From Octopus bimaculoides (taxonomy: Eukaryota), in contig NC_069004.1 in assembly GCF_001194135.2 (NCBI RefSeq), positions 15,164,365 through 15,228,364 of the forward strand: a stretch of DNA of 64,000 nucleotides, written 5' to 3'. Below the pieces are notes generated by a model. The model was not told the origin of the DNA. It was given only the letters and a program-made list of their open reading frames with translations, and did not search any database. Below, piece by piece: positions 32,793 to 63,527 of the stretch. The number at the start of each line of letters is the position of its first letter. The stretch's first letter is position 1. A program made the position numbers and the translations under genes.

Positions 32793-33496
32793 CTGAAAGT
32801 AGAAGAATACAAGAGCTGATTCAGTAATAGCGAGTCAAAACATATTGATTTCAAATTTTGGCACAAGGTCAGTACTTTGCGGGAAGGGAATAAGTTGATT
32901 ATATCAACCATAGTGTTTAACTGGTATTTATTTTATCGACTCCAAAAGGATGAAAGGCAAAGTTGACTTCATCGGAATTTGAACTCAGAACAGAAGGATG
33001 GATGAAATGCTGCTAAGCATTTTGACCGGCGTGCAAATGATTTTGCCAGCTCGCTGCTTTAGCATTGAAAATATTTAGAATTTTGTTACACAATGTAGGG
33101 TGGATTGTATTTTAACTTTCTAGGGGCCAGATAACTGGCATTCCAACAGTTACGACAATAAAGGTTCCAGTTGAGCCAACCAATGGAACAGCCTGCTCAT
33201 GAAGTTAATGTGCAAGTGGCTGAGCACTCCACAGATACGAGTACACTTAATATAGTTCTCAAGGAGATTCAGCATGACACGGAATGTGACAAGGCCAGCC
33301 TTTTGAATAACAGGTACAACTCATGTTTGACAGCTGAGTGGACTGGAGCAACATGAAATAAAGTGTCTTGCTCAAGGACACAACATGCTGCTAGGAATCA
33401 AACTCACAACCTCTTGATTGTGAGCCAATTATCCTGACCACTAAACCATGAGCCTTCACAGAGGCCAGATATGGAAAGAGATACAATGTCTAAATA

Positions 33497-33750
33497 AGTG
33501 GCTCTCAATTGGGGTCTGTATGGCCCTTGGGGATCCATATAAGATTTTCTTGTTAAAATTAATGTGCAATAAATCACTTAAATTCCTTCTGCAATACACA
33601 AAATATTAAAATTTCTTTTACAAAATTCCTGATAATATTTAATTATAAAAATACAGTAAGATTCCATTTTTATATAATTTGAATAACTATGGAGGTCCAG
33701 TAGAATAAAATAGGAATCAGGGGTCCATAGGCAAAAAATGATTGAGAATC
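33497..33750. mobile_element. Older hAT-like non-autonomous element (related copies at about 5665-5950 inverted and 59512-59840)
   Basis: CAGTGG(T/C)TCTCAA-type termini and shared internal ggtccatataagatttt segments. Confidence 0.55.
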
Positions 33751-34566
33751 AATGGTCTGAAGCATCATCATCATCATCATCATCGTTTAACGTCTGCTTT
33801 CCATGCTATAGTTACCATGAGAAAAACTCTCATATTGGCTTTTGGTGCAAAATGCACTCTTGTGTATGTCACTAGCAGGAAGGTGAATCCTTGCCATCTC
33901 CATTGTGGAGACCACCAGATCATGTGATTTCGACCATAACTTGGATGCTCAACTGAAATTAAAATGCCTTTGATCATTGGGGCTAAACAAGTCCCTTCTT
34001 TGGGGAAAAAGAAATGCTGTACTTGACAATGTGATACAGACTATTAACATCATCATCATAATTTTACTCTAGCATCGGTTGACTGACAGTATCTCACCAC
34101 ATGGCATGGTCTTTTATCGTCTGACATACACAACAAAAGAGAACATTGACAATCCATGTTCTTGTGCATGTAAAATGGTTGGCAACAGGAAAGGCATCCA
34201 ACCATGGAAACTAATAAAAAAAAAAGAAATACAACAGCAGAATGGACTATGGGAATTTTACAGTGCCACCAGCACCAAAGAGGTTGTATGCTAGGACTAA
34301 AGAGTCCCCTGCCTGAATAAACAACAAATAATCATAGCTAGAAAAAACACCTTTGGTCATAGGTTTGCTTAATCAGGGCTAACCTAAGGTTAACAAATGA
34401 AACAAATCATTTACAAATAAAACGATATATCTAGATATATAAGTGCTCCAGAATGGTCCTGACCATAATGGCTAAAAGAAATTAAAGAACATAAAGGTAC
34501 AGAGCAATTTACAGATGAATTCCATGACTCCTCTTCATTTTCAGCACAAATTGATTAAGTACTTAC

Positions 34567-34778
34567 TGATTTCTCTCTATGGAGTAGCACCGACTTATTA
34601 AAGCTACATAATAGTCCCCAAACTCTGGATATGGTATATGAATTCTTTGATGATGATGTTGATCGTCTGCAGACTCAATAGAAAGCAGTGCACCATTGGA
34701 ACAATTCTCTAAATTGTGAACATCAGGGAAACCATCTTTGACAATGCACATATAGATGGTAGCAGTCTGGTTCTCTGA
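34567..34778 (-). CDS. PGAP6: PGAP6/TMEM8 exon: SENQTATIYMC...IHIPYPEFGDYYVALISRC
   Basis: ttacAG acceptor, CA|GTaagt donor; IPYPE.G.YY motif. Confidence 0.9.
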
Positions 34779-35288
34779 CTGTAACAAGAAACATAAGTTT
34801 ACATTAACAAATTTCTGAGATATATTCCATTTAAGAGAAATGACAAATGTTTGGGGCCTGAGAATAACAACAAAATCTGACAATGTAACCCTTAGGACTT
34901 CAATATCAATGTGCAATGTTATACTGCAAAGGGACAATGCTCAATCACATAAAATGTCTGAAAAGACTCAGAATTCTTTGACAACATGAGAATAATGATT
35001 TCTTTCACGGACACAAGGCCAAATATTGTATGGGGAGAGAACAGTCAATTACATCAACCCCACTACTTATTCAGTGTTTTATTTAACTGACTCCAGAAGG
35101 ATTGAAAAGTAAAGTTGACCTCAGCAGGATTTGAACTCAGAACGTAAAAATTATTCTATCAAATGTAAGGTTTGTTCATTTATATTATTTTGAATTAATC
35201 ATGCATTATCTTGTAGTTGATGTGGTTGCTTAGACTTCAAGAACACAACACACGGTCAGGAATCGATCATGTGCTGAATACCCTAACC

Positions 35289-35567
35289 CAGGGGCTTTCA
35301 AACTGTGGTCCGCAAGGACAAGATAGGGGGTCCGTGGACAGCAAATACTTTTTCTGGGCAATTTGATTTTATATATGTTTTTTAATCGAAATCTTTTAAT
35401 TGACAATAAACGTATTTGTTAAATACTGTTAAATAAACAAATGTAAAAATATATGTTATTTTAAGCAAATATTTATGTATAAATTTCATAAGCGTTTATA
35501 AGGGGGTCCCTAAGGTAAAGCTTGAAATATAAAGGGGTCTGCAAGTCAAAAAGTTTGAAAACCCCTG
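35289..35567. mobile_element. hAT-type MITE with exact 8-bp TSD
   Basis: TIR caggggctttcaaact / agtttgaaaacccctg; ccctaacc at 35281-88 and 35568-75. Confidence 0.88.
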
Positions 35568-36736
35568 CCCTAACCCACATGTCTCTACTTAGTAATTTAA
35601 AATAAGGTATTTCTATATTATTATTGTCTACCAGGACTTGACATCTCTGATATTTTCGGGTTCATGTCATTGAAGAAAATAAAGATACTAATGACATTTA
35701 AGTAATTGTTTCACTTCATCCAGTTAAATTGTAAATTTTTCATAGATTTTCATCCTCCACAGGAGGCAGTGAACTGGTAGAATTGGTGGATTAGCATTAG
35801 CTCTAACATTTTATATCCAGAGTTAAAGCATCATAGTAACTCTAACTCTTTACTCCACAATACTTTATTTTCAACCAAAAATAAACATATGGGCGTAGGA
35901 GTGGCTGTGTGGTAAGTAGCTTGCTTACGAACCACATGGCTCCGGGTTCAGTCCCACTATGTGGCACCTTGGGCAAGTGTCTTCTACTATAGCATCGGGC
36001 CAACCAAAGCCTTGTGAGTGGATTTGGTATACGGAAACTGAAAGAAGCCCGTCGTATATAAGTTTGTGTCTGTGTATATGCTTGTGTGTCTGTGTTTGTC
36101 CCCACCAACATCACTTGACAACTGATGCTGGTGTGTTTACGTCCCCGTAACCTAGCGGTTCGGCAAAGGAGACCGATAGAATAATACTAGGCTTACAAAG
36201 AATAAGTCCTGGGGTCAATTTGCTTGACTAAAGGCAGTGCTCTAGCATGGCCACAGTCAAATGACTGAAACAAGTAAAAGAGTAAAGAGTATTCAAAATC
36301 GTGAGCATAATACATTTTAAGGCCATTTTCCCTAAAGTAAGCCATTAACCATTGCAAACTCCATAACAGTTTTCTCCACTTTGAATCATATTTATCATGG
36401 CTCCCTTTTTGGGGCAGTGTTTTACAACCAATCAACAACTCTTTTACCTGCCTCATATGACACACAAAGACACTACTGGGCACCTATTCTAGGACAGGGG
36501 AAAACTTAGTAACCTGAATACAAATGTAATAGTGGTTTCAAATTTTGGCACAAGGCCAGTAATTTCGAGAAGAAGGTAAGTCGATTACAACAACCCCAGT
36601 ACTTAACTGGTACTTATTTTATCGACCTCAAAAGGACGAAAGGCAAAGTCGACCTTGGTGGAATAATATTAAAAAAGTATACTAAATTACATCACACAGG
36701 AGGGAAAAAGAAAATAAAAAATTTTTAGAAACTCAC

Positions 36737-37047
36737 AAGTTTTTGTTTATCAAAATGCAACGTTATACCAATGGTACCTCCGGAATTGGATAGAAAACGG
36801 ACATTGAAACCAGTTATCAGACTGTGAGTGTCAGGAACAACTAAAGTGTTGTTCCTCTTTGGCATGAGAAATTCATTGGGAAAGACATAAATACTGTTGA
36901 AGTTCTCACTGGCACTACTGAACTGTCCCAACATAGGAAGTATAATACACTTGGACTGAAATTCTGAGGCCACCTGGCTTTTGTTAGCTGCCATTGATTC
37001 ATCTGTGGAATTCTCCATGAAGATATGTGATGACTTTGCTTCACATT
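36737..37047 (-). CDS. PGAP6: PGAP6/TMEM8 exon: CEAKSSHIF...SNSGGTIGITLHFDKQKL
   Basis: tttcAG acceptor, CTT|GTgagt donor; SGGT motif; phases consistent. Confidence 0.88.
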
Positions 37048-37312
37048 CTGAAACAGTAAGACAACAGAGTTGTTAGTAGTAGCAGCAGCAGCAATAAGGA
37101 GTCTTGTACATTTGTCACAAGGTTGTACTTGAATAAAGAGAAGGTTAAGGCAGAATATCAACAATCCAATGAGAAATACTTATGTGGTGAGGAAAAAGCA
37201 ATGCTGGTTTCAAATTTTGGCACAAGGCCAGCAATTTTGGGGAGAGACTGGATGATAACATCAACCCCAGTATGTGACTGGTACTTATTTTATCAACCCT
37301 GAAAGGATGAAA

Positions 37313-37617
37313 GGAGGCGCAATGGCCCACTGGTTAGGGCAGCGGACTCGCGGTCGGAGGATCGCGGTTTCGATTCCCAGACCGGGGTTTGTGAGTGTTT
37401 ATTGAGCGAAAACACCTAAGCTCCATGAGGCTCTGGCAGGGGGTGGTGGCGACCCCTGTTGTACTCTTTCGCCCCAACTTTCTCTCACTCTTTCTTCCTG
37501 TTTCTTGAGTAACGCTGCGATGGACTGGCGTCCCGTCCAGCAGCTGGGGGGGAACACATACGCCATAGAAACCGGGAAACTGGGCCCATGAGCCTGGCTA
37601 GGCTTTGAAAGGGCGAC
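37313..37617 (+). mobile_element. tRNA-derived SINE nested in another SINE
   Basis: A and B boxes; TSD gaaaggatgaaag / gaaaggatggaag; splits a second-family SINE (37205-37312 + 37618-37730). Confidence 0.85.
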
Positions 37618-38264
37618 GAAAGGATGGAAGGCAAAGTCAACCTTGACAGATTTTGAACTCAGAACATAAAGACAGACAAAATGTCACTAAGCATTTTGCC
37701 TGGTGTGCAAATGCTTCTGCCATCTTGGTGTCTTATGAAAAGGCAATATTAATGAATGACTAATATTTTAATTTCAGGAAATATGGATGAGAAACAATGC
37801 ATGGCATGTTTCAGTATTATTAAGCTTCCTCAACAAAACAGATTTCACTGTTCTTACTTAAGTAATGACAAAAGAATTACTAAGTAGATGTTTGACAATA
37901 TTGCACAGGAGCGGATAGGGAAACTCTGTTAGAGTGACCTGATCCCTGAATAAATTACTGGTATCTTTCTCATTTCCCCCCCGAGACTGAGGGAAAATAA
38001 AAATCAACCTCAACTCAATTTGAATTTTGGGAACGTAGCAGGAGTATAGCTAAATGTCGTATTCAGTAATTAGTTACGTCCACAAAACACTTTCTGAAAC
38101 TGCAACATCTTAATGGATGATACTGATGACAGTGATGATGTTGGTGATGTTGGTGATGAGGTGGAGGAGAACATAGGCTGAGAACTAAAAAATTTAGCAG
38201 CGGAAGAAAGAGGACCATCAATAAAAAAACAATCAAGTGATCATCATCATCATCATCATCATCA

Positions 38265-38530
38265 TCATCGTTTAACGTCCGCTTTCCATGCTAGCACGGG
38301 TTGGACGATTTGACTGAGGACTGGTGAAACCAGATGGCTACACCAGGCTCCAATCTGATTTGGCAGAGTTTCTACAGCTGGATGCCCTTCTTAACGCCAA
38401 CCACTCAGAGAGTGTAGTGGGTGCTTTTACGTGCCACCAGCACGAAGGCCAGTCAGGCGGTACTGGCAACGGCCACACGCTCAAAATGGTATATTTTACG
38501 TGCCACCTGCACGGGAGCCAGTCCAGCAGC
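38265..38530 (-). mobile_element. RTE-related non-autonomous retroelement with (GAT)n tail (copies at about 6980, 12121, 13220, 28700, 47400, 50751, 53900, 60630, 63680)
   Basis: Shared gaagggcatccagctgtagaaa core and catcatcatcgtttaacgtccgctttccatg end; copies at 38265, 50751 and 53900 are near identical. Confidence 0.75.
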
Positions 38531-38838
38531 ACTGGCAACTACTATTTACTATTTAGTACACACCTTCACCACACAGACACTCACAGTATCACCTCCTCCA
38601 TTACTGAGATCTTCTATAACAATTTGCACCACTACATTGACATTGCAGTACCACTTCAGACTGCTACATTGCCACTCCCAAAACACTCCGTGCTACTAGG
38701 CTAACATAATATACCATACCTCTCCTCAGACATTCATATATCACTACATTGACACTGCTGCAACACTTCATACCACTATGCTGACACTGACACAACACAT
38801 CATATACCTACGTTAACGGTACCCCAACAGTAACTTAC

Positions 38839-39122
38839 CTTCAGTGGTTACCTGCCATGTGACAGTGACAGGTGCTGTACTGTTGATATCACGGAGATAG
38901 AAGGCAACAAAGTTTAACCCTGAGCTATTGGGTGACACAACTCGAAGGTGACAGTTCTCCGTAGAATTTGTACAGTTGATGAGAAACTCATCGACATCAA
39001 AAGGTGGCATGTTACCGTTGCCGATGGATACATAGATAGGACATCCTCCAGTGTCCACCGAGTCAACGGTACAGTTGAGTACAGAAAAATAGTACAGGTA
39101 GCTCAGAGGAGGGAGGACAATT
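38839..39122 (-). CDS. PGAP6: PGAP6/TMEM8 exon: IVLPPLSYLYYFSVLNC...NCHLRVVSP...WQVTTE
   Basis: ttccAG acceptor, G|GTaagt donor; open frame extends ORF 38813..39058 upstream. Confidence 0.88.
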
Positions 39123-39337
39123 CTGGAATGAAAAGATTGAACAAATGATAAGAGAAAAGAAAGACTAACTATATAAACATGGTACAGACATACACATATT
39201 CGGGGTGTGAGGTAAATTTAGTGTTGTGCTACAGATGTAGTGAAAGATCCTTTGTTAATTTGAACTCAGAACATTGTAATACAATACCATTTCTCTTCTA
39301 TTTATATATTTAGAACAAATAAGGGATATACATGCAT

Positions 39338-41461
39338 ATTGCATAAGACATGCGTGTAGGACACTGCACAAGATATGCATGAAGAACACTGCACAAGATG
39401 CTTGTAGAACTCTGTGCAAAACACACCTGTGCAACACTGTGCAAGACACCTGTAGGACACTGCACAAAACACACCTGTGCAAGATATACCTGCAGGACAC
39501 TGTGCAAGATACACCTGTAGGGCAGTACATAGGACACACCTGTAGGACAGTACACAAGACACACCTGTAGGGCACTGCACAAGACACACCTGTAGGACAC
39601 TGCACAAGGCATACCTGTAGGACACTGCACAAGACACACCTGTAGGACACTGCACAAGACACACCAATAAGACACTGCAAAAAACACACCTATAAGACAC
39701 TGCATAAGACACACCTATAGGACACTGCACAAGACATGCCTGTAGGACACTGCACAAGACATGCCTGTAGGACACTGCACAATATACACCTGTAAGACGT
39801 TACACAAGACACACCTGTAATACACTGCACAAGACACACATGTAGAAGACTGCACAAAACCCACCTGCAGGACATTACACAAGACACACCTGTAGGAGTC
39901 TGCACACGGCACACTTGTAGGGCACTGCACAAGACACACTTGTAGGACACTGTGCTGCACTAGACATGTCTGTAGGAAATTGTACTGCACTAAACACACT
40001 TGTAGGACACTGCACAAGACACCTGTAGGACACTGCACAAGACACACCTGTAGGATACTGCACAAGACACACCTGTAGGATACTGCACAAGAAACACCTC
40101 TAGGACACTTTACTAAAAACACAGATGTACGACACTGCACAAAACACACCTGTAAAACACTACACACAAGACACACCTATAGGACATTGCACAAAATGCA
40201 CCTCAAAAATGTTGCACAAGACACACCTGTAGGACACTGCTCAAGACATACTTGGAGGACACTGTTCAAGACATACCTGTAGGACACTGTGTGAGACATA
40301 CCTCTAAGACACTATGAGACATACCTGTAGGGCACTGTGTGAGACATACCTCTAAGACACTATGAGACATACCTGTAGGGCACTGTGTGAGACATACCTG
40401 TAAGACACTGCATGAGACATACCTGTAGGACACAGCACAAAACCCACTTGTAGGGCACTGTGTCAGACACAAATGTAGAACACTGCACAAAATGCACTTG
40501 TGTGACACTGTACAAAACACAAGTGTAGGACACTGTACTGCACAAAACACACCTGTAGGACACTGCACAGAACACGTTTGTAAGACAATGCACAAAACAC
40601 TCTTGTAAGACACTTCATGAGACCCACCTGTAGGATACTACACAAAACAAACCTGTTGGACATTTCATAAAACACACATGTGGGACACTGCATAAGACAC
40701 ACCTATAAATCACTGCACAAAGCACATCTGTGCCACACTGCACGGAACATGCCTGTGGGACAATGCAAAAAACACACCTGTGGGACACTGCAAAAAACAA
40801 CACACTTTGTGGGGCACTACACAAAACATACCTGTGAGGCACTGCATAAGTCACACCTATAAAACACTGCACAAGACACACCTGCAGGACACAGCAGAAG
40901 ACACAACTGCAGCACACTGCACAAGACACACCTGTGGCACACTGCACAAGACACATCTGAAGGCACAGCACAAGACACGCCTGTGAGACACTGCACAAGA
41001 TGCCTGTGGAAAACTGCACAAAGCATGCCTGTGGCACACTGCACAAGACATGCTTGTAGGACACTGCACAAAACACACTTGTGGGACACTACACAAAACA
41101 CACCTGTGGAACACTGCACAAGACAGCTGTAGGACACTGCACAAGACACAGCTGTGTGACACTGCATAAAACACACCTGTAGTGCACTGCACAAGACACA
41201 CACATAGAAGATTGCACAAAACACACATGCAGGACATTACACAAGACACATGTGTAGGAGTCTGCACATGGCACACCTGTAAGACATGGCATAAGGCACA
41301 CCTGTAGGACACTGCACAAAGCGCACTTGTAAGACACTGCACAGAACACACTTGTAGGACACTGCAGAAGACACACCTGTAGGACACTGCACAAAACACA
41401 CCTGTAGGACACTGCACAAAACACACCTGTAGGACACTGCACAAAACACACCTGTGGGACG
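39338..41461. repeat. 25-bp minisatellite, about 85 degenerate units
   Basis: Consensus ctgcacaagacacacctgtaggaca; produces Cys-rich ORFs in all minus frames. Confidence 0.95.
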
Positions 41462-41477
41462 TGTCTTTAATACTCAC

Positions 41478-41617
41478 TTATAGTATTTCATCTTGGACTC
41501 AAAACCATGCATTAATGTTGTTGTAACAATTGTATTGGCCACAGCTTGTCCATAACCTTTCCTCGTCTGAGTGACCAACATACCACGTACAGAGTATTTA
41601 CATTTGGTGAGGATACC
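41478..41617 (-). CDS. PGAP6: PGAP6/TMEM8 exon: GILTKCKYSVRGMLVTQ...ESKMKYY
   Basis: ctgcAG acceptor and AA|GTgagt donor; bridges the phase 0 to phase 2 requirement between neighbouring exons. Confidence 0.85.
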
Positions 41618-44169
41618 CTGCAGAAAAATGTACAGTACCACCATCATAATCATTCTAAGCATCATCATCAGCATCACAGCATGACATTTACATAACCTTT
41701 AACCCTTTAGCATTCAGATTACTCTGCGAAATGTGATGTTTGTTTATTCACATTGTTTTGAATTAATCATGAATTAAACTTGTAGCTTCAAAATTTTGAT
41801 AAAGTGATTGCCTGTTTTTAGAATGACATTGTATATAGGGTCAGCCTGAGAGGCAGAGTTTGGCCAGTTTGAGTATAAAATAAGTAGAATATTTGAGCCT
41901 AATATGGCTGGTTTAAATGCTGAAGGGTTAAACATGGATGATATAAAACAGAAAATAGCATAACAGCATAATAATTAGCTCAGTTATTAGCAGAAAGTTG
42001 AAGAGAAAGTAGATGTTATACATGGCAGATGTACAAGAGCAATAAACACAAAGAAAAACAAAGGAGATAGATTTTCTTAAACGCCCAGGAGATTCTCTGG
42101 AGCTAATAGATACTTTCTGATACTTAGGTAGTCAAATTCGCAGTGAAGAAGGATGTTCTGAAAGAATAGTAGCTGGAATAAGAACAGGATGGAGAAAATT
42201 CAGAAAGCTATTACCTCTGTTGGTAATAAAAGGTCTTTCTATCAGAGTGAAAAGAAAATTGTATGATGCTTGAGAACAAACAGCAATGCTACATGGTAGT
42301 GAGAATAGAGTCGAGAATGCAGAGAGCATGCGAAGACTAAAAAGAAATGAAACAAGCCTGCTCTGTTGCAGTACAATGTAAGTGCATTCATGGCAAAATG
42401 TATATGCATTGAGAGAAAAATTGGGCGTAAGCGGAATCAGATGTAGTGTGCAAGAGAGAAGACTGGGTCGGTATGGCCATGTGAAGCATATGGATGAGAA
42501 CAGCTGTATAAAGAAGTGCCAACTGCTAAATGTGGATGGAACTTGTGAAAGAAGACGATCCAGGAAGACATGGGACAAGTAGTGAAGTTTTATCTCAAGA
42601 TGCTGAGCCTTGTGGAATAGAAATGACAAAGGATCAAGGTGATTGGTATTTGCTGTACTCAAGACCTGTCCATCTCAATGAAAGTGAGGTCTCAAAAAGC
42701 ATTAGGTTTATGGATCTTGCCTCTACATCCAACTTGTACTTGTGAAGCCTTCCCTGCCTTTTATCTTCCTAACACCCATCCTTCCACTTTTCTAACTGTG
42801 ACCTTATTCAACTGCTATAACCAAGAGAAAAATATGCACACATTTCATTCTCCTTTGTACTACTAGTTACTTCTCCTCTCCTAAAACCACTTCCTTTCAA
42901 AATCCATCCCTTCCACTTTACTTTTCACCTCTCATCCCTTTCTGTATCTCACTGAGATACATTTTAGGACTGCTATTACTTTATCTTTAACACCCTCCAT
43001 CATTCTCATCACCCTGGCATATCTGCCATTGACAACCCTCCTCCCTACACACACACACACACACACTTGTCTCCTCCACTCACTACTGCCACCCTTTTGT
43101 ATCTCTGACATCCATCTCTTTCACTGTACACCTCTCTCTCTCTCTCTTTCTTTCACACACCTAGTACATCCTCTACATAATTTCTTATCTACCCACAGGT
43201 ATGTTATACTGCTGCTCTCCTACCTTCCCGTACTGCCATTTATCACCTCCTCCTTTCTGAACAACTTCTCACCTCTCCCCCACCATACTGACATTTACCA
43301 TCAGCCCCACCTCCACCTGTGTTCCATTCACTACACTCACCCTACACCCATCTCTAACTATCTGTGACCCTCTCCTCATCCTCTCACACTCTAATGAACT
43401 TATTCACCCCTCCTTTCCAGTTCTTTGTCCTTATTCTCTCCTATACTCAACTTCTTGTATCTTGAAAGTGCACTCTGGCACTTCATTACTGCTATTACTA
43501 TTGTTGTCTTCTTTTCAGCTTCTTACCTCCATCCTCATAACGTGAGATGGCCATGTATCTCCTCCAGAGCAAGATACCCGAATCTGTCCCTCTATCATAC
43601 TTTAGACTCTAAACACCTGGCATAAATCCACCTCCCTCTCTACTACAATTTTACTTAATTGAGGATCTTTTCTTTGTCTTGTGAGTTGCCTGACAACCTC
43701 ACTGTTGCCTGTGGAATATAAAAAAAAAAAGCACCCAGTACAATCTGTAAAGTGGTTGGTCTCTCCCCATAGAAACTATGCCAAAACAGACATTGAAGCT
43801 CAACACAGTCCGCCAACTTATTGGATCCTGTCAAATCATCCAGCTTGTGCTGGCAAGCAAGACAAATATTACATGATGATGGTGATATATATATCATATT
43901 TTGATAGGTTATCATCATTAGATATTATATTCTTGGACATGCACATGGTACCAGGCTGGATTTGGACAAGGAAACTTTCAAGCAAGGTGTTCCCAACTAG
44001 TAATACTTGCATTCTCTGAGAGTGAGATATTATTTCATAGGGTGAGACAAAGAGGGAAAGTATATACTTTATTAAAATCACTTTTCAGAAAAAAATTATT
44101 AAACAATTCCTAAGAAATAACTTTGTTTTATTAAGCACAGCAGAAATTTTATTGTTCCACAGTACCAAA

Positions 44170-45423
44170 CAGGGGTTGGACAAAATAATGGAAACACCTT
44201 AAAATTTCAAACAAATTTATTTTAATATGGGGTACGATCGCCTTCGGCAGTAATTACAGCTTGAATTCTACGAGGTAAGGACTCGTACAAAGTTTGAATT
44301 GCTTCCAAAGGAATTTTTGTCCATTCTTCAGCTAAAACAGTCTCCAGTTCTTGTAGTGATGATGGTGGTGGATATCGACTCCTTATTTGTTTTTCTAAAA
44401 TGCACTATAAATGTTCAATAATATTGAGATCTGGGGACTGTGGTGGCCAGATAAGATGTTCAACTTCACTAGAATGTTCCTCGTGCCATTCAGTAACAGC
44501 TTTAGCTGTGTGAATTGGTGCATTATCATCATGAAACAATTCTGCAACCATAGGATGAATTTGATCAGATAAAATGCTTAAATAGTCATGACTATTAATT
44601 CTGCCATAAAAGGGAAACCATTGGGCCAGCGGATTTCCAAGATATAGCCCCACCAGATCATCACAGATCCTCCTTCACGTTTAACAGTTGGAAGAAGGCA
44701 GTCTGGATCAAATGCTTCTTTTGGCTGTCTCCACACATATACTTAGCCAGTGGTCGGAAATAAGGTAAAGGATGACTTGTCTGAGAAAATAACATTCTTC
44801 CACTGCTCTAGGGACCAATTCTGTAGGTTTTCACTTCACTCTAAACACTTTGCAATGTTTGTTTTTGGAAGTAGTGGTTTTCTAATTGCAGCCCTCCTGT
44901 GAAATGCAGCTTTGTGCAGCGCCCGGCGAACAGTTTTTGTGGAAACTGGGTTCTCGAGGTGGTCATTAAGCTCTGCAGTAATTTTGGGAGCTGTACTTTT
45001 GTGATCCTTTCTAACAATTTGCATAAGAGTCTGATGGTCCCTATCTGAAAGTCTTGGTTTTCTTCCAGAGTTTTGTTTCGACAAGGAGGTTTTTCACTCT
45101 TTCTCAAAGGCTGTCATTACTTTCGAGACAGTACATTTTGATATCACCAAACATTTTGGCTGTTTTGTTATGCTAGCACTTGCCATATGAGCACCAACAA
45201 TTTGACCGCTTTGAAAGTCCGATAGATCTGTCATTTTAATGAATTTTAATTACCTTTTTCTGGTGATATCTGAAAAGAAACAGCAATTTTAGCAAAACAT
45301 ATTAAGCAACACTAATAATAAATCAAAAAGCATAAAAATAAACAAGCTTTTGACAGTTTTATAGATATTTCAAGATTTTGATGCTATGATGCTAAGTGTT
45401 TCCATTATTTTGTCCAACCCCTA
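44170..45423 (-). mobile_element. Full-length degenerate Tc1-like DNA transposon
   Basis: About 28-bp TIRs (caggggttggacaaaataatggaaacac / gtgtttccattattttgtccaacccct). Transposase pieces MTDLSDFQSGQIVG, SGRKPRLSDRD...RKPLL and DDNAPIH...WPPQSPDLNIIEHL, with frameshifts. Confidence 0.93.
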
Positions 45424-45793
45424 TATGTCATTGAATTTCTAATAAATAAACTTAGAAAACTGATTTTTCTCATTTCCAAATGTAATATTGGTTTCAAATT
45501 TTGGCACAAAATTTGAAACCAATATTAGGGTCGGGGGGCTAAGTCATTAACATCAACCCCAGTGCTCAAATCATACTTATTTCATCGACCCCAAAAGGAT
45601 GAAAGCCAAAGTCAACCTCAACAGAATTTGAACTCAGAGTGTAAAGATAAAGTGCTGCTAAGTATTTTACCCAGTGTGCTAATGGTTCTGCCAGCTACCT
45701 ACCTTATTATTCCTTCCAAAATGTTCTCTCATAAATTTATTTGTACTTCACACTGTATTACTTGTACTCTAGTAATAACTAACATATAATTAC

Positions 45794-45998
45794 CTTCTGT
45801 TGTATTTTTTCATTGGGGTTTGGTAAAAGTGCAGCTGCAAACCATGGTCCATGTCTTGGTGCATCCATATTAATGACAGTTGTCCTGTTGTCAGAACGTA
45901 AGATGAAACGCTCGGAAAATGTTCGTTTTAAGTAGAATGTATTTGGAAATGTTTTGTTGGTGAGGTTGATGATAGGAAAACTGCCATACTGTAAAAAA
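45794..45998 (-). CDS. PGAP6: PGAP6/TMEM8 exon: FLQYGSFPIIN...DAPRHGPWFAAALLPNPNEKIQQK
   Basis: Polypyrimidine tract + ccAG acceptor, AAG|GTaatt donor; within ORF 45779..46090. Confidence 0.9.
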
Positions 45999-47914
45999 CT
46001 GGAAAGGAAAAAAAAAAAAGTTAAAATCAGTATTGAAGGAGATACAACCATAAAAGATAAACAAGCTGGAAATTGCAGGTCAAGTCCCATCAGAGGTACA
46101 GAATTTTTTTTATAGGCGTAGGTGTGGCTGTGTGGTAAGAAGCTTAGATTGCAAATTTAAAGACACATAGTTTATGTTAAAACTAGCCCCTTGTGGGCAA
46201 TAAAGAAATAAGAAGCTTGTGATAAGAAAACTAAAAATAAATGAAGCAAGCTTGCTCTGTTGCATGTACAATGTAAGTGCATGACAAAACGTAAATGTGT
46301 TGAGAGAAAAACTGGGCATAAAATGAATCAGATGTAGTATGCAAATGTGAAGATTACACTGGTATTGCTCAGTAGTGCATATGGATGAGAAGAGCTGCAA
46401 GGTTCAACATCGGTTTTCACCACTTCATCCCATGTCTTCCTCTTCCACAGGTCCGATCAACTTTGTGTGCTCAGCACTTCCTTTATGCAGCTTTCATTAT
46501 ACACATCACACATCCATATCATCACAGTTCTCTCTCTTACAAACTACAGCTCATTCCTCATGTGCACAGTTTTCCTCTGAGGTCATTTGTCCCATGTTGT
46601 TCAAGCAGACTGACATTATGCCTCCATTGGAACATGCTTGTGCCATTTCTTTCTAGCCTTTGCTTATCCTCAACATTCAAGGCTCAGATCTCATTACACT
46701 TCACACTCAAGTATCATCTCAGAGTATTGGTAACGAGTGCCTCATTTATAGATAATGACAATGAAAACTTTTAGTAAGATTAAAAAACAAGAAAACAAGA
46801 GGTAGATTACTGAGTGGAAGGGACATCAAAAAGGTTTCCAGAAGTCAGTCGTGGTTATGGTGGTGTGAATACAAGGTGAAAAGATTGGCAAACCAAGGTG
46901 TTGAAGGATTAATGAATCCAAGCAAAAGAGTCACTTAACTTTCCATTTAACAGCCCAATCAAATCCAGTAAGATGAGAATCAAATGAAACTTATATCATT
47001 AGCAGAATTTAGTATTAACACACACACACACACACAAGAAAAGAGAACCAGTATTTCATAAAGGGCAATTGGATGTATCTCATTCTTAATGTAAAGTTTT
47101 ATGATAAATTAGGTGACAGGTGTATAATAAAGAATACAGTTTTCAAAGATGTTGTCTCCAACAACTGCACCATCTGTACTACCTGCGTAGGCTTTATGTT
47201 AACACGAGAATGAAACAACTCAGAAGAAAATACAACTTCAAATAAAAAAGAAAATTATGTATTTCATGATCCTCTGTAAAATTCAAATTATCATATAACT
47301 TTGCAAAATACCTACAAAACATTCATAAGTATTGTTTGTAATTAATGTGTAGCAAAAAAGCCAATGTATTCAGAGAAATAACTACATTTCTACAAAATTG
47401 CAGTCATGGCAGATACCGGTGTACACAAAATAGCACCCATTGCCAGTGATACATAAAAGCACCCCAGTGTTATGCAAAAGGCACTCGTACAGTAGCATGT
47501 AAAAGCACCCATTACACTCTCGGAGTGGTTGTCGTTAGGAAGGGCATTCAGCCGTAGAAAAAAAAACCATGCCAAATCAGACTGGAGTCTGGTGCAGCCT
47601 TTCAGTGTGCCAGCCTGGTCAAACCATCCAACCCATGCCAACATGGACAATGGACATTAAATGACGATGTTGATGATGATGGTAACGCATGCTAAGTAAA
47701 AACAAATGTGCAACAATATGATGATGAAAGAATTTTGCAGCAGAAATGAGCTGAGTGACTGGAGACAGATGAAGTTTTTAAAAAGATCAAAGAGTGATAG
47801 GTTTCAACACACAAAGGGTTAAGGCAACAGGAATAGAGATTATTAAATATAGCTTCATCCAACACAACCATGTATCAATGAATATGCTAAAGATATTAGA
47901 CTATGTTTTTTAAC

Positions 47915-48450
47915 GAGCTCACTGGCTAATCACAACACCAGTGTCTGTCCTGAGATGGCAGGGATTTATCTCTCTGCTAGCAATATAAGCAAGCATGCAT
48001 TTTGCACCAAAAGCCTATAGGAGAGTATCTCTCGTGCTATCTACTGCAGTATAGTTTGTTCTAACAGAACATCCAGGTTTAAGTGGGGATAAATATTACC
48101 TCTCAGTATTAATACTGCCTCTGTCGCTAATATATATTTTTTAACAAGCTCAGTGGTTAATCATGACACCAGCGCCTGTCCTGGTACTGACTTTCTATAG
48201 ACTGCTGGTGGGGAGATGAGTTGCTGCTATCTCTAGCGGTTGAGTGTCTGTCAATGAAAAGATCAAGGAAGGTCGAAATCATGTGATCTAATGCTCTCGG
48301 CACTGGAGATGGCAGGGATTTATCTCCCACTAGCAATATAAACAGGTGAGCATTTTACATCAAAAGCCCATATGAGAATTTCTCTCATGGTATCTACTGC
48401 AGTATAGTTTGTTCTAACAGAACATCCACATTTAAATGAGAATAAATATT
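47915..48450. repeat. Diverged tandem duplication (about 190-bp unit; second copy has about 120 extra bp)
   Basis: gagatggcagggatttatctc...ctactgcagtatagtttgttctaacagaacatcca occurs twice. Confidence 0.8.
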
Positions 48451-48955
48451 AGCATTAGACACTATGGAGACAGAAAATAGCAACAGGCCTAGTGACAGGA
48501 TTTGAACAACTAATTTAACACTTCTAGGTAATCATGCTGTTAGCAATTTACCTTTTTCAAACCATGAATCATTTTGTTTCATTGTTGTGTATATTTTTTT
48601 TTTTTTGTTATTTTATTAACTATTTTATCTTTGACATGCTTTATCAGTCATTTAGTCATTTATTGCTAACAGACAAGGCCACTTTACTAATGTCCAACAT
48701 AGTAAGATATCCTACTTTGTTTCTTCTTTTTATGTTTGTGATAAGAAATAACCGATTAATCAAATTACAAATTATCTACAGGCGTGGTAAGAAGCTTACT
48801 TCCAAACTACATAATTCCAGGCCCAGTCTCACTACACAGCACCTTGGGCAAGTGTCTTCTACTACAGCCTCAGGCCAACCAAAGCCTTGTGAGTGGATTT
48901 AGTAGATGGAAACTGAAAGAAGCCCATTGTATGTATGTATATATATATATATATA

Positions 48956-49310
48956 TACAGGGTGTGGTGAATAAACTGTCGTCTAAATTACACAAAAATG
49001 AAAATAACACTGACATCTCATTTTAACATATATTTACCAAAATTACATTAAAATATCTTGAAATACTAAAGAGTAAATTTATTCAATAAAATCGCCATTG
49101 GCTTCAACCACAGCCTCTAGATGACTTCAGAATCTCCTACAACTCTTCTGGACAGTCTCCTTGTTTAAGTCGGTGAATGTTACCATAATCCTTGCCTTCA
49201 GCTCATCTTTGGTGTTACAAGGAGTTTTGTTGGTCTCTCATTCAACTGCACCCCACCCATTATAATCAAGGGGGTTGCAGCCTGGGGAGTTAGGTGGCCA
49301 GATGTTAGGG
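48956..49310 (-). mobile_element. 3' end of mariner/maT-like transposon
   Basis: TA-CAGGGTG terminus; minus-strand NIWPPNSPGCNPLDY...VVEANGDFIE*, similar to 52110-52330. Confidence 0.75.
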
Positions 49311-49673
49311 ATCAGGAACTTTTTTTAACCAATTACCCCAAAATACGTTTATTTACACTGATGTTACCCCCTTTATTTGAAAGGAAGAAAATCATAGATT
49401 CTTTGAATTCAAAAGGTTTACTGAATCCATTTTATTGAATCTATTTAAACATCCATTACATTAGAAAGATGCAATGTTGCCAGAAAAAAATTTCTGTCAT
49501 AACAAGGAACACATATTATGTAATTTTACTTAAGTCTAATGAGTCCTCATTACCCACAAGAATTTCATTTTTACCCTACTTGGGGTAATTTACTCTGGTT
49601 CACCAACCCCTGTTCTAAGCCATAACGCTTTTTTTTCTATTTTCTTTTTTTTTTGTTTCAAAATCCAACTTAC

Positions 49674-49848
49674 ATGTAAACCTGCTTAACTTCGCAACTG
49701 GCTTTATCTGAGAAACTTTGGAACTTCCATATACTCTGTGTGGATGCTTCTGGAACAGTGAATTCTAACAGCTGTGAATCAGGGAACAAATGGTAACCTC
49801 GAATTTGTAATGGAGGGGTCCATGACACATAATCTTGATATATGACTT
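49674..49848 (-). CDS. PGAP6: PGAP6/TMEM8 coding exon (first visible): VIYQDYVSW...EFTVPEASTQSIWKFQSFSDKASCEVKQVY
   Basis: Acceptor tctttcAG and donor GTaagt. Starts phase 1 and ends phase 2 (AT|T = Ile with the next exon). Resembles the TMEM8 N-terminal F.VPE...W.F...C segment. Absent from the ORF track. Confidence 0.85.
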
Positions 49849-50942
49849 CTGAAAGACAAAATATTTTTTAAAAAATATTTAGTATAGCAACATTACACTG
49901 TCTGGAACAATAACATCTATATCATAATTTCTTTGTTCGTGTGCCCATTATACTTTAGTTAGTTAGAGAGGTGGAGTGAGAGAGAGAGAGAGAGAGTCAG
50001 AGGGGAGAAATATGAGTAGAGAAAAAAGAAGAGAGGAGTATAATAATACACTAAGGCTAGATGCATCACATGGTTAGTTGAAGGGCGAGGCAAAGATGGT
50101 GAGGAAAAAGACAGTGAGAGAAAAGTGGGAGAGAGAAGTGTTAATGACGTACTGTAGGATGGGGAGAAAAAGGTGAAGAAAATGAGAGAAATTTTAAAGA
50201 TATGAAGAGGGGAATTACATGGTTAAAAAGTTTGTTGAAGAGGTAGAGAGAGAGGGGAATTTTAAAATCATATAATATATAATTGTGATTGGAAGGGAAA
50301 TAATTTAGCAAAATAAAAATATTGGATCTAGAATTTTCAGTTGTGCGATCACCAGCAATGCAACTTTCCAATGCTCTGTCGAGTAGGAGGATACCACAGT
50401 GAGAATGGAAGCTGCAGGTGTAGTCTTGAGTGAAGCCAACCATGGGTACAATAACCTCATACATAGGCATTGTCGACATTTTGCATAAGCGATGATCAGT
50501 AATGGTCTTCCTGAGTCACAAGTGTACATCATGTATGTATGTGTGTGTATGTATATGTATATNNNNNNNNNNNNNNNNNNNNNNNNNNNNNNNNNNNNNN
50601 NNNNNNNNNNNNNNNNNNNNNNNNNNNNNNNNNNNNNNNNNNNNNNNNNNNNNNNNNNNNNNNNNNNNNNNNNNNNNNNNNNNNNNNNNNNNNNNNNNNN
50701 NNNNNNNNNNNNNNNNNNNNNNNNNNNNNNNNNNNNNNNNNNNNNNNNNNTGGGTTGGACGATTTGACTGAGGACTGGTGAAACCGGATGGCAACACCAG
50801 GCTCCAATCTAATTTGGCAGAGTTTCTACAGCTGGATGCCCTTCCTAACGCCAACCACTCAGAGAGTGTAGTGGGTGCTTTTACGTGTCACCCGCACGAA
50901 AACGGCCACGCTCGAAATGGTGTCTTATATATATATAATTTA

Positions 50943-60300: not shown

Positions 60301-60964
60301 TTTTAGTTGAATGAATTGACCCCAGTACTTGTTATTTTTTTAAGCCTAGTACTTATTCTATCAATCTCTTTGCTGAACCACTAAGTTATGGGAACATAAA
60401 CCTAATACTGGTTGTCAAGCATAAGTGGGGGACAAATAGATACAAAGATATGCACACATTATATATATATATACATATACATACATATATACATTTTATT
60501 TTCAATATTAATAAGATTCTACTTTTGTGACCACTTTCAAAATTAGACCAACACTAGTTTTGGCAGGAAATTAGTACCCAACATAAACTTGGTGTAGCCT
60601 TTACTAATTACTGAGTAAATTTACGAATTCATCATCATAATCATTTAACATCTGCTGTCCATGCTGGCATAGGTTGGACAGATTGACCAGGGCTGACAAG
60701 CTGGAAGGCTGCACCAGACTCCAACCACTCCAAGAGTGTAATGGATGCTTTTACATGCCACCAGCACGGGTGCCATTTGTTTGACATCAATATCTGCCAT
60801 AACGGCAGTTTTACTTGATTTTATGGGTCTTCTTCTCAAGCACAGCATAATGCCAAATGGACTCAGCCATTACCTCTGTGAGGCCCAACACTCAAAGCAC
60901 AGTATAATGCCAAATAGTCTCAGTCCTTGCCTCCATGAGGCCCTATAAATATATATAACACGTA

Positions 60965-61433
60965 TATAAGGGATGACCACTAATGTTCTCCAACCGGCAA
61001 CATATACTGCAGTGAATTATTCTCTGCAGAATTGTTTCCAGAATTTTGCGCGCCGGAGCTGAGGCATTTTGAAAAGTAGCCCCAATGTAATCGGTAGAAC
61101 TGTATGTAAGTCTTATTTTCATGAAGACAATTCGTGTATAGTTCTGCAAATTATATTGATTCTAGAACGTCTATGCTGATGAGAACATGGATGTTACTAC
61201 GCAAGTATAACGTTAATGTTCGAAACTGCAGTCCATAGATAACTCTTTATTCTGTATAGTTCTCATTTTGTCCTGTTCTGGCGTTTTGCGAAATTTTTCT
61301 GGAGAACATTATTTTTCTTTGTGGTTGGGTCGTTGATGACCTCTTTCTAGCATATTGGATGCCCACCTAGTGGTCATCCCTTATACACGTGTAATACAAT
61401 TTTTTCTGAATTTTCAAATTTTTTATATGCTAG
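60965..61433 (+). mobile_element. Hammerhead-carrying element with 18-bp terminal inverted repeat (Penelope pLTR/retrozyme-like)
   Basis: tataagggatgaccacta (60965) and tagtggtcatcccttata (61368-85); CpG-richer interior with the hammerhead; the right-end tail is homologous to 63350-63450; truncated by an N gap. Confidence 0.6.
61169..61240 (+). ncRNA. Minimal type I hammerhead ribozyme (Penelope/retrozyme-type)
   Basis: Stem I gtctatg/catagat; core CTGATGA (61176-82); stem II gaacat/atgttc extended to a GCAA tetraloop; GAAA (61222-25); stem III AC-tgca-GT; cleavage triplet GTC (predicted cut after 61233). Confidence 0.88.
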
Positions 61434-63203: not shown

Positions 63204-63296
<93 letters not shown>

Positions 63297-63390
63297 GAGG
63301 GATGACCACTAAGTGGACATCAATTATGCTAGAAGAAGACCAGGTGGGTTTCTTCTAGCATAATTGATGTCCACTTAATGGTCATCCCTC
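63297..63390. repeat. 41-bp-stem foldback related to the ends of the hammerhead element
   Basis: gagggatgaccactaagtggacatc...agaagaa, 12-nt loop, reverse complement with 1 mismatch. Confidence 0.9.
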
Positions 63391-63527
63391 TTATATGTAT
63401 GTAATATAATTTTTCTGAATCTTCAGACTTTTCAATATGCTAGGCCACTAGTTTTAAATTGATATTAATTAAATTAATACTCAATTTTTCACCCTATTTA
63501 AATATATATATATATATATATATATAT

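What the first reader, a model, noticed from the sequence alone, without database searches (positions are those of the whole stretch)
61169..61240. Intact minimal type I hammerhead ribozyme hidden in an apparently non-coding repeat
Seen: every catalytic core nucleotide is present (CUGAUGA, G10.1-C11.1, GAAA, A-U/C-G stem III, GUC). Stem I has 6 WC + 1 GU pairs, and stem II has 6 WC pairs extending to a GCAA (GNRA) tetraloop. Stem III is only 2 bp with a palindromic loop; ACTGCAGT is self-complementary. Established: minimal type I hammerheads with palindromic loop III occur in Penelope-like elements and metazoan retrozymes, and can cleave as dimers. Inference: this is a probably active self-cleaving RNA, antisense to the PGAP6-like gene.
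Basis: partly seen in the sequence, partly recalled or inferred. Interest (0 to 1): 0.88.

Follow-up and report, generated by a model that had tools for sequence, protein, structure and literature searches.

The report
Solitary hammerhead ribozyme retroelement copy
A complete self-cleaving hammerhead ribozyme motif really is at this spot, but it sits in a single ~340-base copy of a kind of small ribozyme-carrying mobile element that is already known to litter animal genomes, so it is a real and fairly ordinary find.

Summary
Window 61169-61240 (+) holds a type I hammerhead with every core nucleotide. Helix I has 7 bp and helix II has 6 bp extended to 16 bp with a GCAA loop. Helix III has 2 bp inside the palindrome ACUGCAGU, and the cut site follows C61233. 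None of 300 dinucleotide shuffles of the window gave such a motif. Rfam Hammerhead_1 aligns end to end but scores below its threshold (22.6 against 34 bits).

The motif is not free-standing. It lies in a non-coding unit of about 340 nt with 37% G+C (60983-61322) that interrupts one arm of a hairpin repeat. As + strand RNA the unit folds into a rod with z about -7 to -8. The - strand gives z about -2 to -3, and none of 38 control segments shows this asymmetry. A lone ribozyme copy is predicted to misfold, whereas two copies pair through helix III with both cores open.

The best reading is a solitary daughter copy of a retrozyme-like or Penelope-related hammerhead element in an octopod-like genome. 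It probably cleaves only with a partner and cannot release a circle on its own.

Three points are not supported. "Probably active" is untested. "Antisense to the PGAP6-like gene" is unresolved. No other copies could be reached, so covariation was not tested. The finding is a new member of a known kind, of low to moderate interest.

The parts
61169..61240 (+). Type I hammerhead ribozyme motif (helix I open, helices II and III closed). The predicted cut lies between C61233 and C61234.
   Evidence: Sequence read; descriptor scan I=7, II=6; 0 of 300 shuffles give such a motif; Rfam Hammerhead_1 aligned full length at 22.6 bits.
61176..61182 (+). Catalytic box CUGAUGA (C3-A9).
61183..61221 (+). Helix II. 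It has 6 Watson-Crick pairs from G10.1-C11.1, then a 1x1 G/A internal loop, 7 bp, a bulged C and 3 bp, capped by a GCAA tetraloop (61201-61204).
   Evidence: Fold. This helix also persists in the fold of the whole unit.
61222..61233 (+). GAA box (G12-A14), helix III (A15.1-U16.1 and C15.2-G16.2 closing loop UGCA; ACUGCAGU is a palindrome) and C17.
   Evidence: The homodimer cofold forms an 8-bp intermolecular helix III.
60983..61322 (+). Non-coding unit of about 340 nt with 37% G+C that carries the hammerhead. It is a single copy in the window, and its + strand RNA is strongly self-paired.
   Evidence: Similarity to the uninterrupted hairpin copy is lost at 60983 and resumes near 61323. No second copy in the window. 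Fold energy -108.2 kcal/mol with z -7.2 on +, against -72.6 with z -2.3 on -. The asymmetry is unique among 38 controls. The longest ORF is 68 aa and has no homologue.
60983..60992 (+). 5' strand of the unit's closing helix (AUGUUCUCCA). It pairs with 61300-61309.
61300..61309 (+). 3' strand of the closing helix (UGGAGAACAU). It is followed by a 13-nt U-rich end, 61310-61322.
61040..61078 (+). 5' strand of the long-range rod helix. It pairs with 61257-61297, and 6 of the 32 pairs in this helix are G-U (42 long-range pairs in all when the 10-bp closing helix is included).
   Evidence: Pair list.
61257..61297 (+). 3' strand of the long-range rod helix.
60947..60982 (.). Left arm of hairpin repeat H1, the insertion target, lying next to a TA-rich tract.
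   Evidence: Inverted repeat I1; alignment to H2.
61323..61433 (.). Remainder of hairpin repeat H1: the resumed left arm (GGTTGGG), a diverged centre, the right arm (to 61403) and the conserved tail, running up to the assembly gap at 61434-62000.
   Evidence: Joining 60982 to 61323 gives the most stable joined hairpin of those tried.
63294..63443 (.). H2, an uninterrupted paralogue of the hairpin repeat. It serves as an 'empty site' comparator and follows a (TA)38 tract.
28073..49849 (-). Mapped exons of the TMEM8/PGAP6-like (DUF3522) gene. The ribozyme lies 11.3 kb beyond its most upstream mapped exon, on the other strand.
   Evidence: Pfam DUF3522; tblastn with the Argonauta hians protein; collinear tblastx with Argonauta locus L002; no ATG in the exon at 49.8 kb.

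Best explanation
This is one solitary, unit-length genomic copy of a small, non-coding, hammerhead-carrying retroelement. It is of the metazoan non-LTR retrozyme / Penelope-pLTR-derived kind and sits in an octopod-like genome.

Shown here:
- The ~340-nt AT-rich unit (60983-61322) interrupts the arm of an unrelated hairpin repeat.
- Its + strand RNA, which is the ribozyme's polarity, folds into a highly paired rod whose two ends pair with each other. The hammerhead lies in the 3' half.

Inferred:
- Master copies elsewhere, either tandem arrays or elements next to a Penelope-like reverse transcriptase, are transcribed.
- Two hammerheads pair through the palindrome ACUGCAGU to build a stable helix III, and each cuts after its C17.
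- The unit-length RNA, possibly circularised by a host ligase, is copied back into DNA by a Penelope-like RT/endonuclease that favours AT-rich targets.
- The copy in this window is a dead-end daughter. If read through by a host transcript it could cut that RNA between 61233 and 61234. As a single copy it would cut weakly, and it cannot release a unit or a circle.
For: - The motif is complete and far beyond chance. Rfam Hammerhead_1 aligns end to end.
- Unit size (~340 nt), G+C (37%), lack of an ORF and strong self-pairing (z -7.2; circular fold -107.7 kcal/mol) match the published description of non-LTR retrozymes: ~150-450 bp, G+C below 45-50%, 'highly self-paired', type I hammerhead (PMC7229834).
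- The structure is strand-specific. It scores -108.2 against -72.6 kcal/mol and has 14 against 6 G-U pairs. With 40 shuffles per strand, z is -8.3 against -2.9, the largest asymmetry among 39 segments. True DNA palindromes in the window are symmetric, for example -6.1 and -6.6. This points to selection on an RNA of the ribozyme's polarity.
- There is an insertion signature. The hairpin arm breaks at 60982/60983 and resumes at about 61323, and an uninterrupted paralogue lies at 63294-63443. The site adjoins a TA-rich tract, and (TA)n or AT-rich targets are reported for Penelope-like elements (PMC8557442, PMC11167929).
- The dimer-dependent fold is predicted, as reported for this class (PMC4209133, PMC7229834).
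- Monomeric derivatives of retrozyme families are reported to be dispersed along chromosomes, and retrozymes are reported to derive from Penelope pLTRs (bioRxiv 10.64898/2026.07.22.740005).
- Penelope-like elements exist in cephalopods (PMC6962438, PMC8557442).
Against: - The defining tandem arrangement is absent here; there is one unit only.
- No other copy of the unit could be found by any route, so family membership, copy number and covariation are untested.
- No Penelope-like ORF occurs in the window.
- There is no target-site duplication, and the unit's exact ends rest on one diverged paralogue.
- The unit has 10-bp perfect terminal inverted repeats flanked by TA on both sides, which also fits a DNA-transposon-derived element.
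- Helix II (16 bp) is much longer than in canonical retrozyme hammerheads, so the usual loop-loop tertiary contacts are unlikely.
Confidence: 0.58

Rival explanations
1. It is the 5'-truncated 3' end (pseudo-LTR piece) of an autonomous Penelope-like element, possibly with a short inverted truncated copy at its left end, rather than a separate non-autonomous retrozyme-type element.
For: - Penelope-like elements carry type I hammerheads with a long helix II and a small palindromic helix III in their pLTRs.
- Most genomic motifs of this kind are single and are attributed to truncated elements (PMC4209133).
- Insertions are often heavily 5'-truncated, with an inverted truncated copy forming inverted repeats, and they favour (TA)n or AT-rich targets (PMC8557442, PMC11167929).
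- The unit's ends are inverted repeats, and the site adjoins a TA-rich tract.
Against: - No RT or GIY-YIG coding remnant occurs in the window (tblastn with the Poseidon_Ac protein; Pfam).
- The end-to-end pairing is RNA-like, being G-U rich and strand-asymmetric, not a clean DNA-level inverted duplication. A DNA alignment of the two ends is poor.
- The bulged base between A9 and G10.1 that is typical of Penelope minimal hammerheads is absent, and helix I is 7 bp rather than 4-5 (against PMC4209133).
Confidence: 0.22
2. It is a miniature inverted-repeat DNA transposon (Tc1/mariner-like, with TA duplication) that happens to carry, or has captured, a hammerhead motif.
For: The sequence reads TA|ATGTTCTCCA ... 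TGGAGAACAT|TA. That is a 10-bp perfect terminal inverted repeat at 60983-60992 and 61300-61309, with TA on both sides. The size (327 bp) and AT-richness are typical of such elements.
Against: - After the right-hand TA the sequence does not continue the interrupted hairpin arm. The arm resumes only at about 61323, so the TA pair is not a clean duplication of the target.
- The fold is strongly strand-asymmetric, unlike the window's true DNA palindromes.
- A complete hammerhead arising in such an element by chance is very unlikely.
Confidence: 0.08
3. It is a host-domesticated ribozyme that processes a transcript of, or antisense to, the neighbouring TMEM8/PGAP6-like gene, like the conserved intronic hammerheads of amniotes.
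For: The motif is intact and lies within 11.3 kb of the gene's most upstream mapped exon, which is not the first exon.
Against: - It is on the opposite strand to the gene.
- It sits inside an insertion within a repeat.
- The Argonauta hians orthologous locus shows neither the unit nor any hammerhead, although only 7.2 kb of DNA upstream of that gene model could be fetched.
Confidence: 0.03
4. It is a chance match with no biology behind it.
For: Relaxed hammerhead-like matches do occur by chance at about 0.13 per window. One such match lies at 62799-62865 on the minus strand.
Against: None of 300 shuffles gave the observed helix lengths. My own rough estimate combines the core pattern (0.04 per window) with two independent 6-bp helices and gives about 1e-8 per window. 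That stays far below one expected occurrence even across a multi-gigabase genome. The surrounding strand-specific rod is independent support.
Confidence: 0.01

Closest known systems
Metazoan non-LTR retrozymes (Cervera & de la Pena 2020, PMC7229834), e.g. the 350-390-bp mussel repeats
   Same: Both have a type I hammerhead, a unit of a few hundred bp, low G+C and no ORF, LTR, PBS or PPT. Both have a highly self-paired RNA of the ribozyme's polarity and a helix III of 2 bp capped by a palindromic tetraloop. As in the mussel family, the canonical loop1-loop2 contact nucleotides are missing.
   Different: There is a single unit here, not a tandem array. Helix II has 16 bp instead of about 4. No expression or circular RNA evidence is available. 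I found no paper in the searched library that treats hammerhead ribozymes together with cephalopods beyond a Rfam count in the giant squid genome and a Penelope-like element survey; no retrozyme-plus-cephalopod query was run with all terms required.
Minimal hammerheads of Penelope-like elements (Cervera & de la Pena 2014, PMC4209133; Craig et al. 2021, PMC8557442)
   Same: Both have a longer than usual helix II, a conserved G10.1-C11.1 pair, a palindromic 15.2-16.2 region and loop 3, and an inferred dimer mechanism. Most genomic copies of this class are solitary, and AT-rich targets are reported.
   Different: There is no adjacent RT/GIY-YIG ORF. The bulged nucleotide between A9 and G10.1 is absent. 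Helix I has 7 bp rather than 4-5, and a real 2-bp helix III with a 4-nt loop is present.
Newt/axolotl satellite hammerheads (HHR_Amex1 and HHR_Amex2, PMC7229834)
   Same: Helix III is very weak with a palindromic tetraloop. Self-cleavage is poor in monomers and efficient in dimers, which matches the cofold prediction here.
   Different: Those ribozymes occur in huge tandem arrays of 330-350-bp units and keep the loop-loop tertiary contacts. This one does neither.
Rfam Hammerhead_1 (RF00163)
   Same: The alignment covers the full length of the model. All core positions and all three helices are aligned.
   Different: The score of 22.6 bits is below the gathering score of 34, and the motif is invisible in a whole-window scan. 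The main cause is the 31-nt insertion in helix II.
Schistosoma Sm-alpha SINE-like hammerhead repeats (cited in PMC4209133; details from my own knowledge)
   Same: Both are short non-coding retroposed units that carry a type I hammerhead and are dispersed in an invertebrate genome.
   Different: I did not establish a tRNA-like or Pol III promoter region here. The ribozyme architecture also differs.

Membership tests
Hammerhead ribozyme, type I | Conserved core: C3 U4 G5 A6 N7 G8 A9, G12 A13 A14, A15.1-U16.1 and H17. | tested here: met
   CUGAUGA 61176-82, GAA 61222-24, A61225-U61232 and C61233.
Hammerhead ribozyme, type I | Three helices around the core, with helix I open-ended and a G10.1-C11.1 pair. 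| tested here: met
   Helix I has 7 bp, helix II has 6+10 bp and helix III has 2 bp.
Hammerhead ribozyme, type I | Score at or above the Rfam RF00163 gathering threshold. | tested here: not met
   No hit at gathering thresholds. The score is 22.6 bits against 34 when 101 nt are searched.
Hammerhead ribozyme, type I | Site-specific self-cleavage that depends on core nucleotides. | not testable with these tools
   This needs in vitro transcription and cleavage assays. Folding predicts a misfolded monomer and a competent dimer.
Hammerhead ribozyme, type I | Compensatory changes in helices I and II among related copies. | not testable with these tools
   No second copy was found in the window, in protein-space searches, in metagenomes or in the Argonauta locus.
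Non-LTR retrozyme | Short unit (~150-450 bp), low G+C, no ORF, LTR, PBS or PPT. | tested here: met
   The unit is ~340 nt with 37% G+C. The longest ORF is 68 aa and has no homologue.
Non-LTR retrozyme | Head-to-tail tandem repeats (dimer to multimer), each unit with a hammerhead. | tested here: not met
   One unit and one hammerhead are present. Hairpin-repeat sequence flanks both sides. An assembly gap starts 111 nt downstream.
Non-LTR retrozyme | Highly self-paired RNA of the ribozyme's polarity. | tested here: met
   z is -7.2 to -8.3 on the + strand against -2.3 to -2.9 on the - strand, unique among 38 controls.
Non-LTR retrozyme | Expression as linear and circular unit-length RNA. | not testable with these tools
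   No transcriptome data were available.
Penelope-like element hammerhead | Location in the pseudo-LTR of an element that encodes RT plus a GIY-YIG endonuclease. | tested here: not met
   tblastn with the Poseidon_Ac protein against the window gives no hit. The only RT fragments are LINE-type with zf-RVT.
Penelope-like element hammerhead | Long helix II, a palindromic 15.2-16.2 region and loop 3, and G10.1-C11.1. | tested here: met
Penelope-like element hammerhead | An unpaired nucleotide between A9 and G10.1, and a short (4-5 bp) helix I. | tested here: not met
   A9 is followed directly by G10.1, and helix I has 7 bp.
MITE (Tc1/mariner-type) | Terminal inverted repeats with a TA target duplication. 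| tested here: inconclusive
   A 10-bp perfect inverted repeat and flanking TA dinucleotides are present. However, the target sequence resumes 13 nt beyond the right-hand end of the inverted repeat (11 nt beyond the flanking TA), not directly after it.
MITE (Tc1/mariner-type) | DNA-level palindromic ends, with structure equal on both strands. | tested here: not met
   The strand asymmetry in z is 5.5 units, whereas real DNA palindromes in the window are symmetric.

The most novel reading that the evidence does not exclude
This copy may betray an undescribed cephalopod family of retrozyme-like elements. Its hammerhead has an unusually long 16-bp helix II and works only as a dimer, and the family may be expressed as ~340-nt circular RNAs in octopod tissues. 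The exact-ended insertion, with both ends meeting in the U-rich loop that closes the rod, would then record where reverse transcription of the circle starts and stops.
Probability: 0.2. Interest if true: 0.45.

Novelty: new member of a known kind. Interest (0 to 1): 0.27.

Why it matters
The find matters only modestly. It adds a cephalopod-type genome to the hosts of hammerhead-carrying retroelements. It also gives a concrete probe, the 340-nt unit and the covariance model, for asking whether octopods have active retrozymes or circular RNAs and which Penelope-like element mobilises them.

It illustrates two practical points. Curated Rfam thresholds miss such variants because of a long helix II. 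And strand-asymmetric fold z-scores can separate RNA-derived insertions from DNA palindromes.

For the neighbouring TMEM8/PGAP6-like gene it matters only if a transcript crosses the site in the + direction.

Tried and rejected
- Other copies through protein space. The 68-aa ORF across the unit found nothing in the 5.8-billion protein index. It found only one spurious hit (E=5e-4) among 1.84 billion representatives.
- Metagenome scans. The family-specific pattern gave 0 hits. A generic pattern (CTGATGAG..CGAAACTGCAGTC) gave 11 contigs. Only one of them, L004 1432-1463 on the minus strand, is a proper hammerhead, and it is unrelated to the unit.
- A covariance model built from the motif and run over the whole window with filters off. 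Only the motif itself scored (112.8 bits). The next hits, at 20 bits or less, are microsatellites or hairpins.
- The orthologous region in Argonauta hians (L002, 24.9 kb). It contains neither the unit nor a hammerhead.
- A link to a Penelope-like element. The window has no such ORF. A search with the Poseidon_Ac RT found 4779 relatives, but the 120 listed are reptile, insect and other non-cephalopod proteins, so no cephalopod element could be fetched.
- Raw fold energy and raw strand difference as evidence. I rejected these because control segments reach -112 kcal/mol and differences of 35 kcal/mol. Only the composition-corrected z-scores discriminate.
- A DNA-level alignment of the unit's two ends as inverted repeats. 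It was weak.
- A second hammerhead on the opposite strand at 62799-62865. It is at chance level.
- Identifying the species. Only 'octopod-like' is supported: the best protein match is Argonauta hians at 57% identity, with exon identities of 55-85% and apparent similarity between a window repeat and the Argonauta locus in a noisy tblastx comparison.

Full report
**Observation.**
- Helix I pairs GUCUAUG (61169-61175) with CAUAGAU (61234-61240), giving six Watson-Crick pairs and a terminal G-U.
- The box CUGAUGA is at 61176-61182.
- Helix II starts with G10.1-C11.1 and has six Watson-Crick pairs (61183-61188 with 61216-61221). The fold of the 72-nt motif extends it past a 1x1 G/A internal loop by seven pairs, a bulged C and three pairs to a GCAA loop.
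- GAAA is at 61222-61225.
- Helix III is A-U plus C-G around UGCA, so ACUGCAGU (61225-61232) is a perfect palindrome.
- C17 is 61233.

**Chance.**
- The bare core pattern occurs once and is expected 0.04 times per window.
- My structural descriptor finds this motif as the only strong hit on either strand (helix I 7 bp, helix II 6 bp). It also finds one weak hit at 62799-62865 on the minus strand.
- In 300 dinucleotide shuffles of the window, strict hits numbered 0, intermediate hits averaged 0.013 per window and relaxed hits averaged 0.13 per window.
- The weak hit is therefore at chance level and the candidate is not. My rough estimate combines the core rate with two independent 6-bp helices and gives about 1e-8 per window. 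That remains negligible for a genome of gigabases.

**Rfam.**
- At gathering thresholds the whole window yields only a borderline tRNA-like hit.
- With 431 nt searched, only RAGATH-1-hammerhead appears, at 21.5 bits and E=0.29.
- With 101 nt searched, Hammerhead_1 (RF00163) aligns over its full 45 positions at 22.6 bits and E=0.001, below the gathering score of 34. The alignment shows a 31-nt insertion where the model expects 6 nt of helix II.
- The motif is thus a hammerhead by anatomy but fails the curated score.

**Monomer or dimer.**
- The minimum-energy fold of the isolated motif (-21.5 kcal/mol) is not the active one. C3-U4-G5 pair with the CAG of loop III.
- The hammerhead-competent secondary structure scores -16.0 kcal/mol.
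- Two copies cofold at -48.9 kcal/mol, against -43.0 for two misfolded monomers. They form an 8-bp intermolecular helix III through the palindrome and leave both cores open.
- This is the behaviour described for newt and axolotl hammerheads and inferred for those of Penelope-like elements. Single motifs cleave poorly or not at all and dimers cleave (PMC4209133, PMC7229834). In the anole element, cleavage even needed the element's protein (PMC11167929).

**Context.**
- The ribozyme is single-copy in the window by blastn and by a covariance model built from it.
- It lies between the arms of an inverted repeat, 60947-60982 and 61368-61403.
- That inverted repeat belongs to a hairpin repeat that has an uninterrupted paralogue at 63294-63443, directly after a (TA)38 tract.
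- Similarity between the two copies is lost at 60983. Joining 60982 to 61323 gives the most stable joined hairpin of those tried, and the arm resumes as GGTTGGG opposite CCCACC.
- The carrying unit is therefore 60983-61322, about 340 nt, inserted into the left arm with no clear target duplication.
- It has 37% G+C. Its longest ORF is 68 aa, with no homologue in either large protein search.

**The unit as RNA.**
- The + strand folds at -108.2 kcal/mol (z -7.2) into a rod. The ends pair (60983-60992 with 61300-61309), and a long helix joins 61040-61078 to 61257-61297. Helix II of the ribozyme is kept.
- The - strand folds at only -72.6 kcal/mol (z -2.3).
- The + fold uses 14 G-U pairs and the - fold uses 6.
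- Raw energies and raw strand differences of this size also occur in control segments, so I compared z-scores instead. Among the unit and 38 control segments of the same length, the unit has the lowest z (-8.3) and by far the largest strand asymmetry (5.5 units; the next largest is 3.3). Segments that hold DNA palindromes or microsatellites are symmetric, for example -6.1 and -6.6, or -5.1 and -6.0.
- A direct DNA alignment of the unit's two ends as inverted repeats is poor.
- The pairing therefore looks selected at the RNA level, in the ribozyme's polarity.
- As a circle the unit folds equally well (-107.7 kcal/mol), with the 13-nt U-rich 3' end forming the closing loop.

**Host and neighbouring gene.**
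- Pfam DUF3522 exons lie on the minus strand.
- The best protein match is a partial Argonauta hians protein at 57% identity.
- Exons map to 37048-28073. By collinear tblastx with the Argonauta locus L002, further exons map to 49849-49667, 46009-45791, 41629-41474 and 39169-38831.
- In a noisy tblastx comparison, the core of a SINE-like repeat next to the ribozyme also appears to match the Argonauta locus. The window is therefore from an octopod-like cephalopod.
- The exon at 49.8 kb has no start codon, so at least one exon lies further upstream.
- The ribozyme lies 11.3 kb beyond that exon on the other strand. It may be in a 5' intron or outside the gene. 'Antisense to the gene' is not established.

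**Interpretation.** The anatomy fits the published description of metazoan non-LTR retrozymes: a type I hammerhead, a unit of a few hundred bp, low G+C, no coding capacity and a highly self-paired RNA (PMC7229834). A 2026 preprint derives these elements from the pseudo-LTRs of Penelope-like elements and reports that their monomeric derivatives are dispersed along chromosomes (bioRxiv 10.64898/2026.07.22.740005). The defining tandem arrangement is not met at this locus. I therefore read the copy as a solitary daughter of such a family. It could self-cut only with a partner ribozyme or a helper protein, and it cannot release a unit-length or circular RNA.

**Rivals.**
- The closest rival is a heavily 5'-truncated end of an autonomous Penelope-like element. 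Such truncated solitary motifs are the majority in other animals (PMC4209133). Penelope insertions favour AT-rich or (TA)n targets and often carry inverted truncated copies (PMC8557442, PMC11167929). Against it, the window has no RT/GIY-YIG remnant, the end pairing is RNA-like, and two details of the Penelope minimal hammerhead are missing: the bulge after A9 and the short helix I.
- A MITE reading is suggested by 10-bp perfect terminal inverted repeats with TA on both sides. However, the target does not resume right after the right-hand TA, and the strand asymmetry argues against a DNA palindrome.
- Domestication by the host gene and pure chance are both unlikely.

**What could not be done.** No eukaryotic genome collection was searchable by DNA. 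Copy number, tandem arrays elsewhere, association with a Penelope-like ORF and covariation in helices I and II all remain untested. All indirect routes failed.

**Verdict.** The motif is real and well formed. The class is well known, with thousands of such motifs per genome in many animals (PMC4209133), and 235 Hammerhead_1 hits were already counted in the giant squid genome (PMC6962438). This is a new member of a known kind. The long helix II and the clean strand-specific rod are the only unusual traits.

Noticed in passing
window 63294-63443 (H2) and 60947-61433 (H1): A hairpin repeat with near-perfect 45-bp arms and a 7-nt centre lies directly after a (TA)38 tract and is followed by a conserved ~55-nt tail. 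It is a DNA-level palindrome, with symmetric fold z-scores on both strands. I do not know which element family it belongs to.
   Followed up: partly
window 60486-60943; copies at 55478-55680 and 63524-63990; fragments near 12.3, 28.7, 38.4, 47.5, 50.8 and 54.0 kb: A SINE-like repeat ends in a 57-nt internal duplication (60838-60886 and 60895-60943) followed by a TA-rich tract. In a noisy tblastx comparison its core also appears to match the Argonauta hians locus L002 (about 1500-1550 and 2002-2055), which would make it an old octopod repeat.
   Followed up: partly
window 39480-41460: A 25-nt minisatellite with about 79 copies and 76% matches lies in an intron of the TMEM8/PGAP6-like gene. It produces long Cys-rich pseudo-ORFs on the minus strand.
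   Followed up: partly
window ~48200-48335 (+): An imperfect hairpin of about 135 nt lies here. The 341-nt segment that contains it has the second largest strand asymmetry of fold z-scores in the window (-6.0 on + against -2.7 on -).
   Followed up: no
window 3522-3585 (-): A tRNA-like match sits exactly at the Rfam threshold (29.2 against 29 bits). It may be the head of a tRNA-derived SINE.
   Followed up: no
window 14942-15319, 19220-19726, 20375-21070, 29224-29574 and 56968-57393: ORFs here look like fragments of LINE-type retrotransposons. Pfam found RVT_1 in the first two (weakly in 14942-15319) and zf-RVT in the third. It found nothing in 56968-57393, and 29224-29574 was not scanned. None is Penelope-like.
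   Followed up: partly
window 62799-62865 (-): A relaxed hammerhead-like pattern (helix I 5 bp, helix II 3 bp, helix III 1 bp) lies 1.6 kb from the real motif on the opposite strand, beyond the assembly gap. Such hits occur at 0.13 per shuffled window, and it shows no sequence similarity to the unit.
   Followed up: yes
window 49667-49849, 45791-46009, 41474-41629 and 38831-39169 (-): Four further exons of the TMEM8/PGAP6-like gene are collinear with a separately annotated 254-aa gene just upstream of the Argonauta hians homologue. The Argonauta annotation probably splits one gene in two.
   Followed up: partly
L004 1432-1463 (-), metagenome contig Ga0105240_10178229: This is a compact canonical type I hammerhead (helix I 5 bp, helix II 4-5 bp) with the same ACUGCAGU helix III. 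It is unrelated in sequence to the unit studied here.
   Followed up: partly
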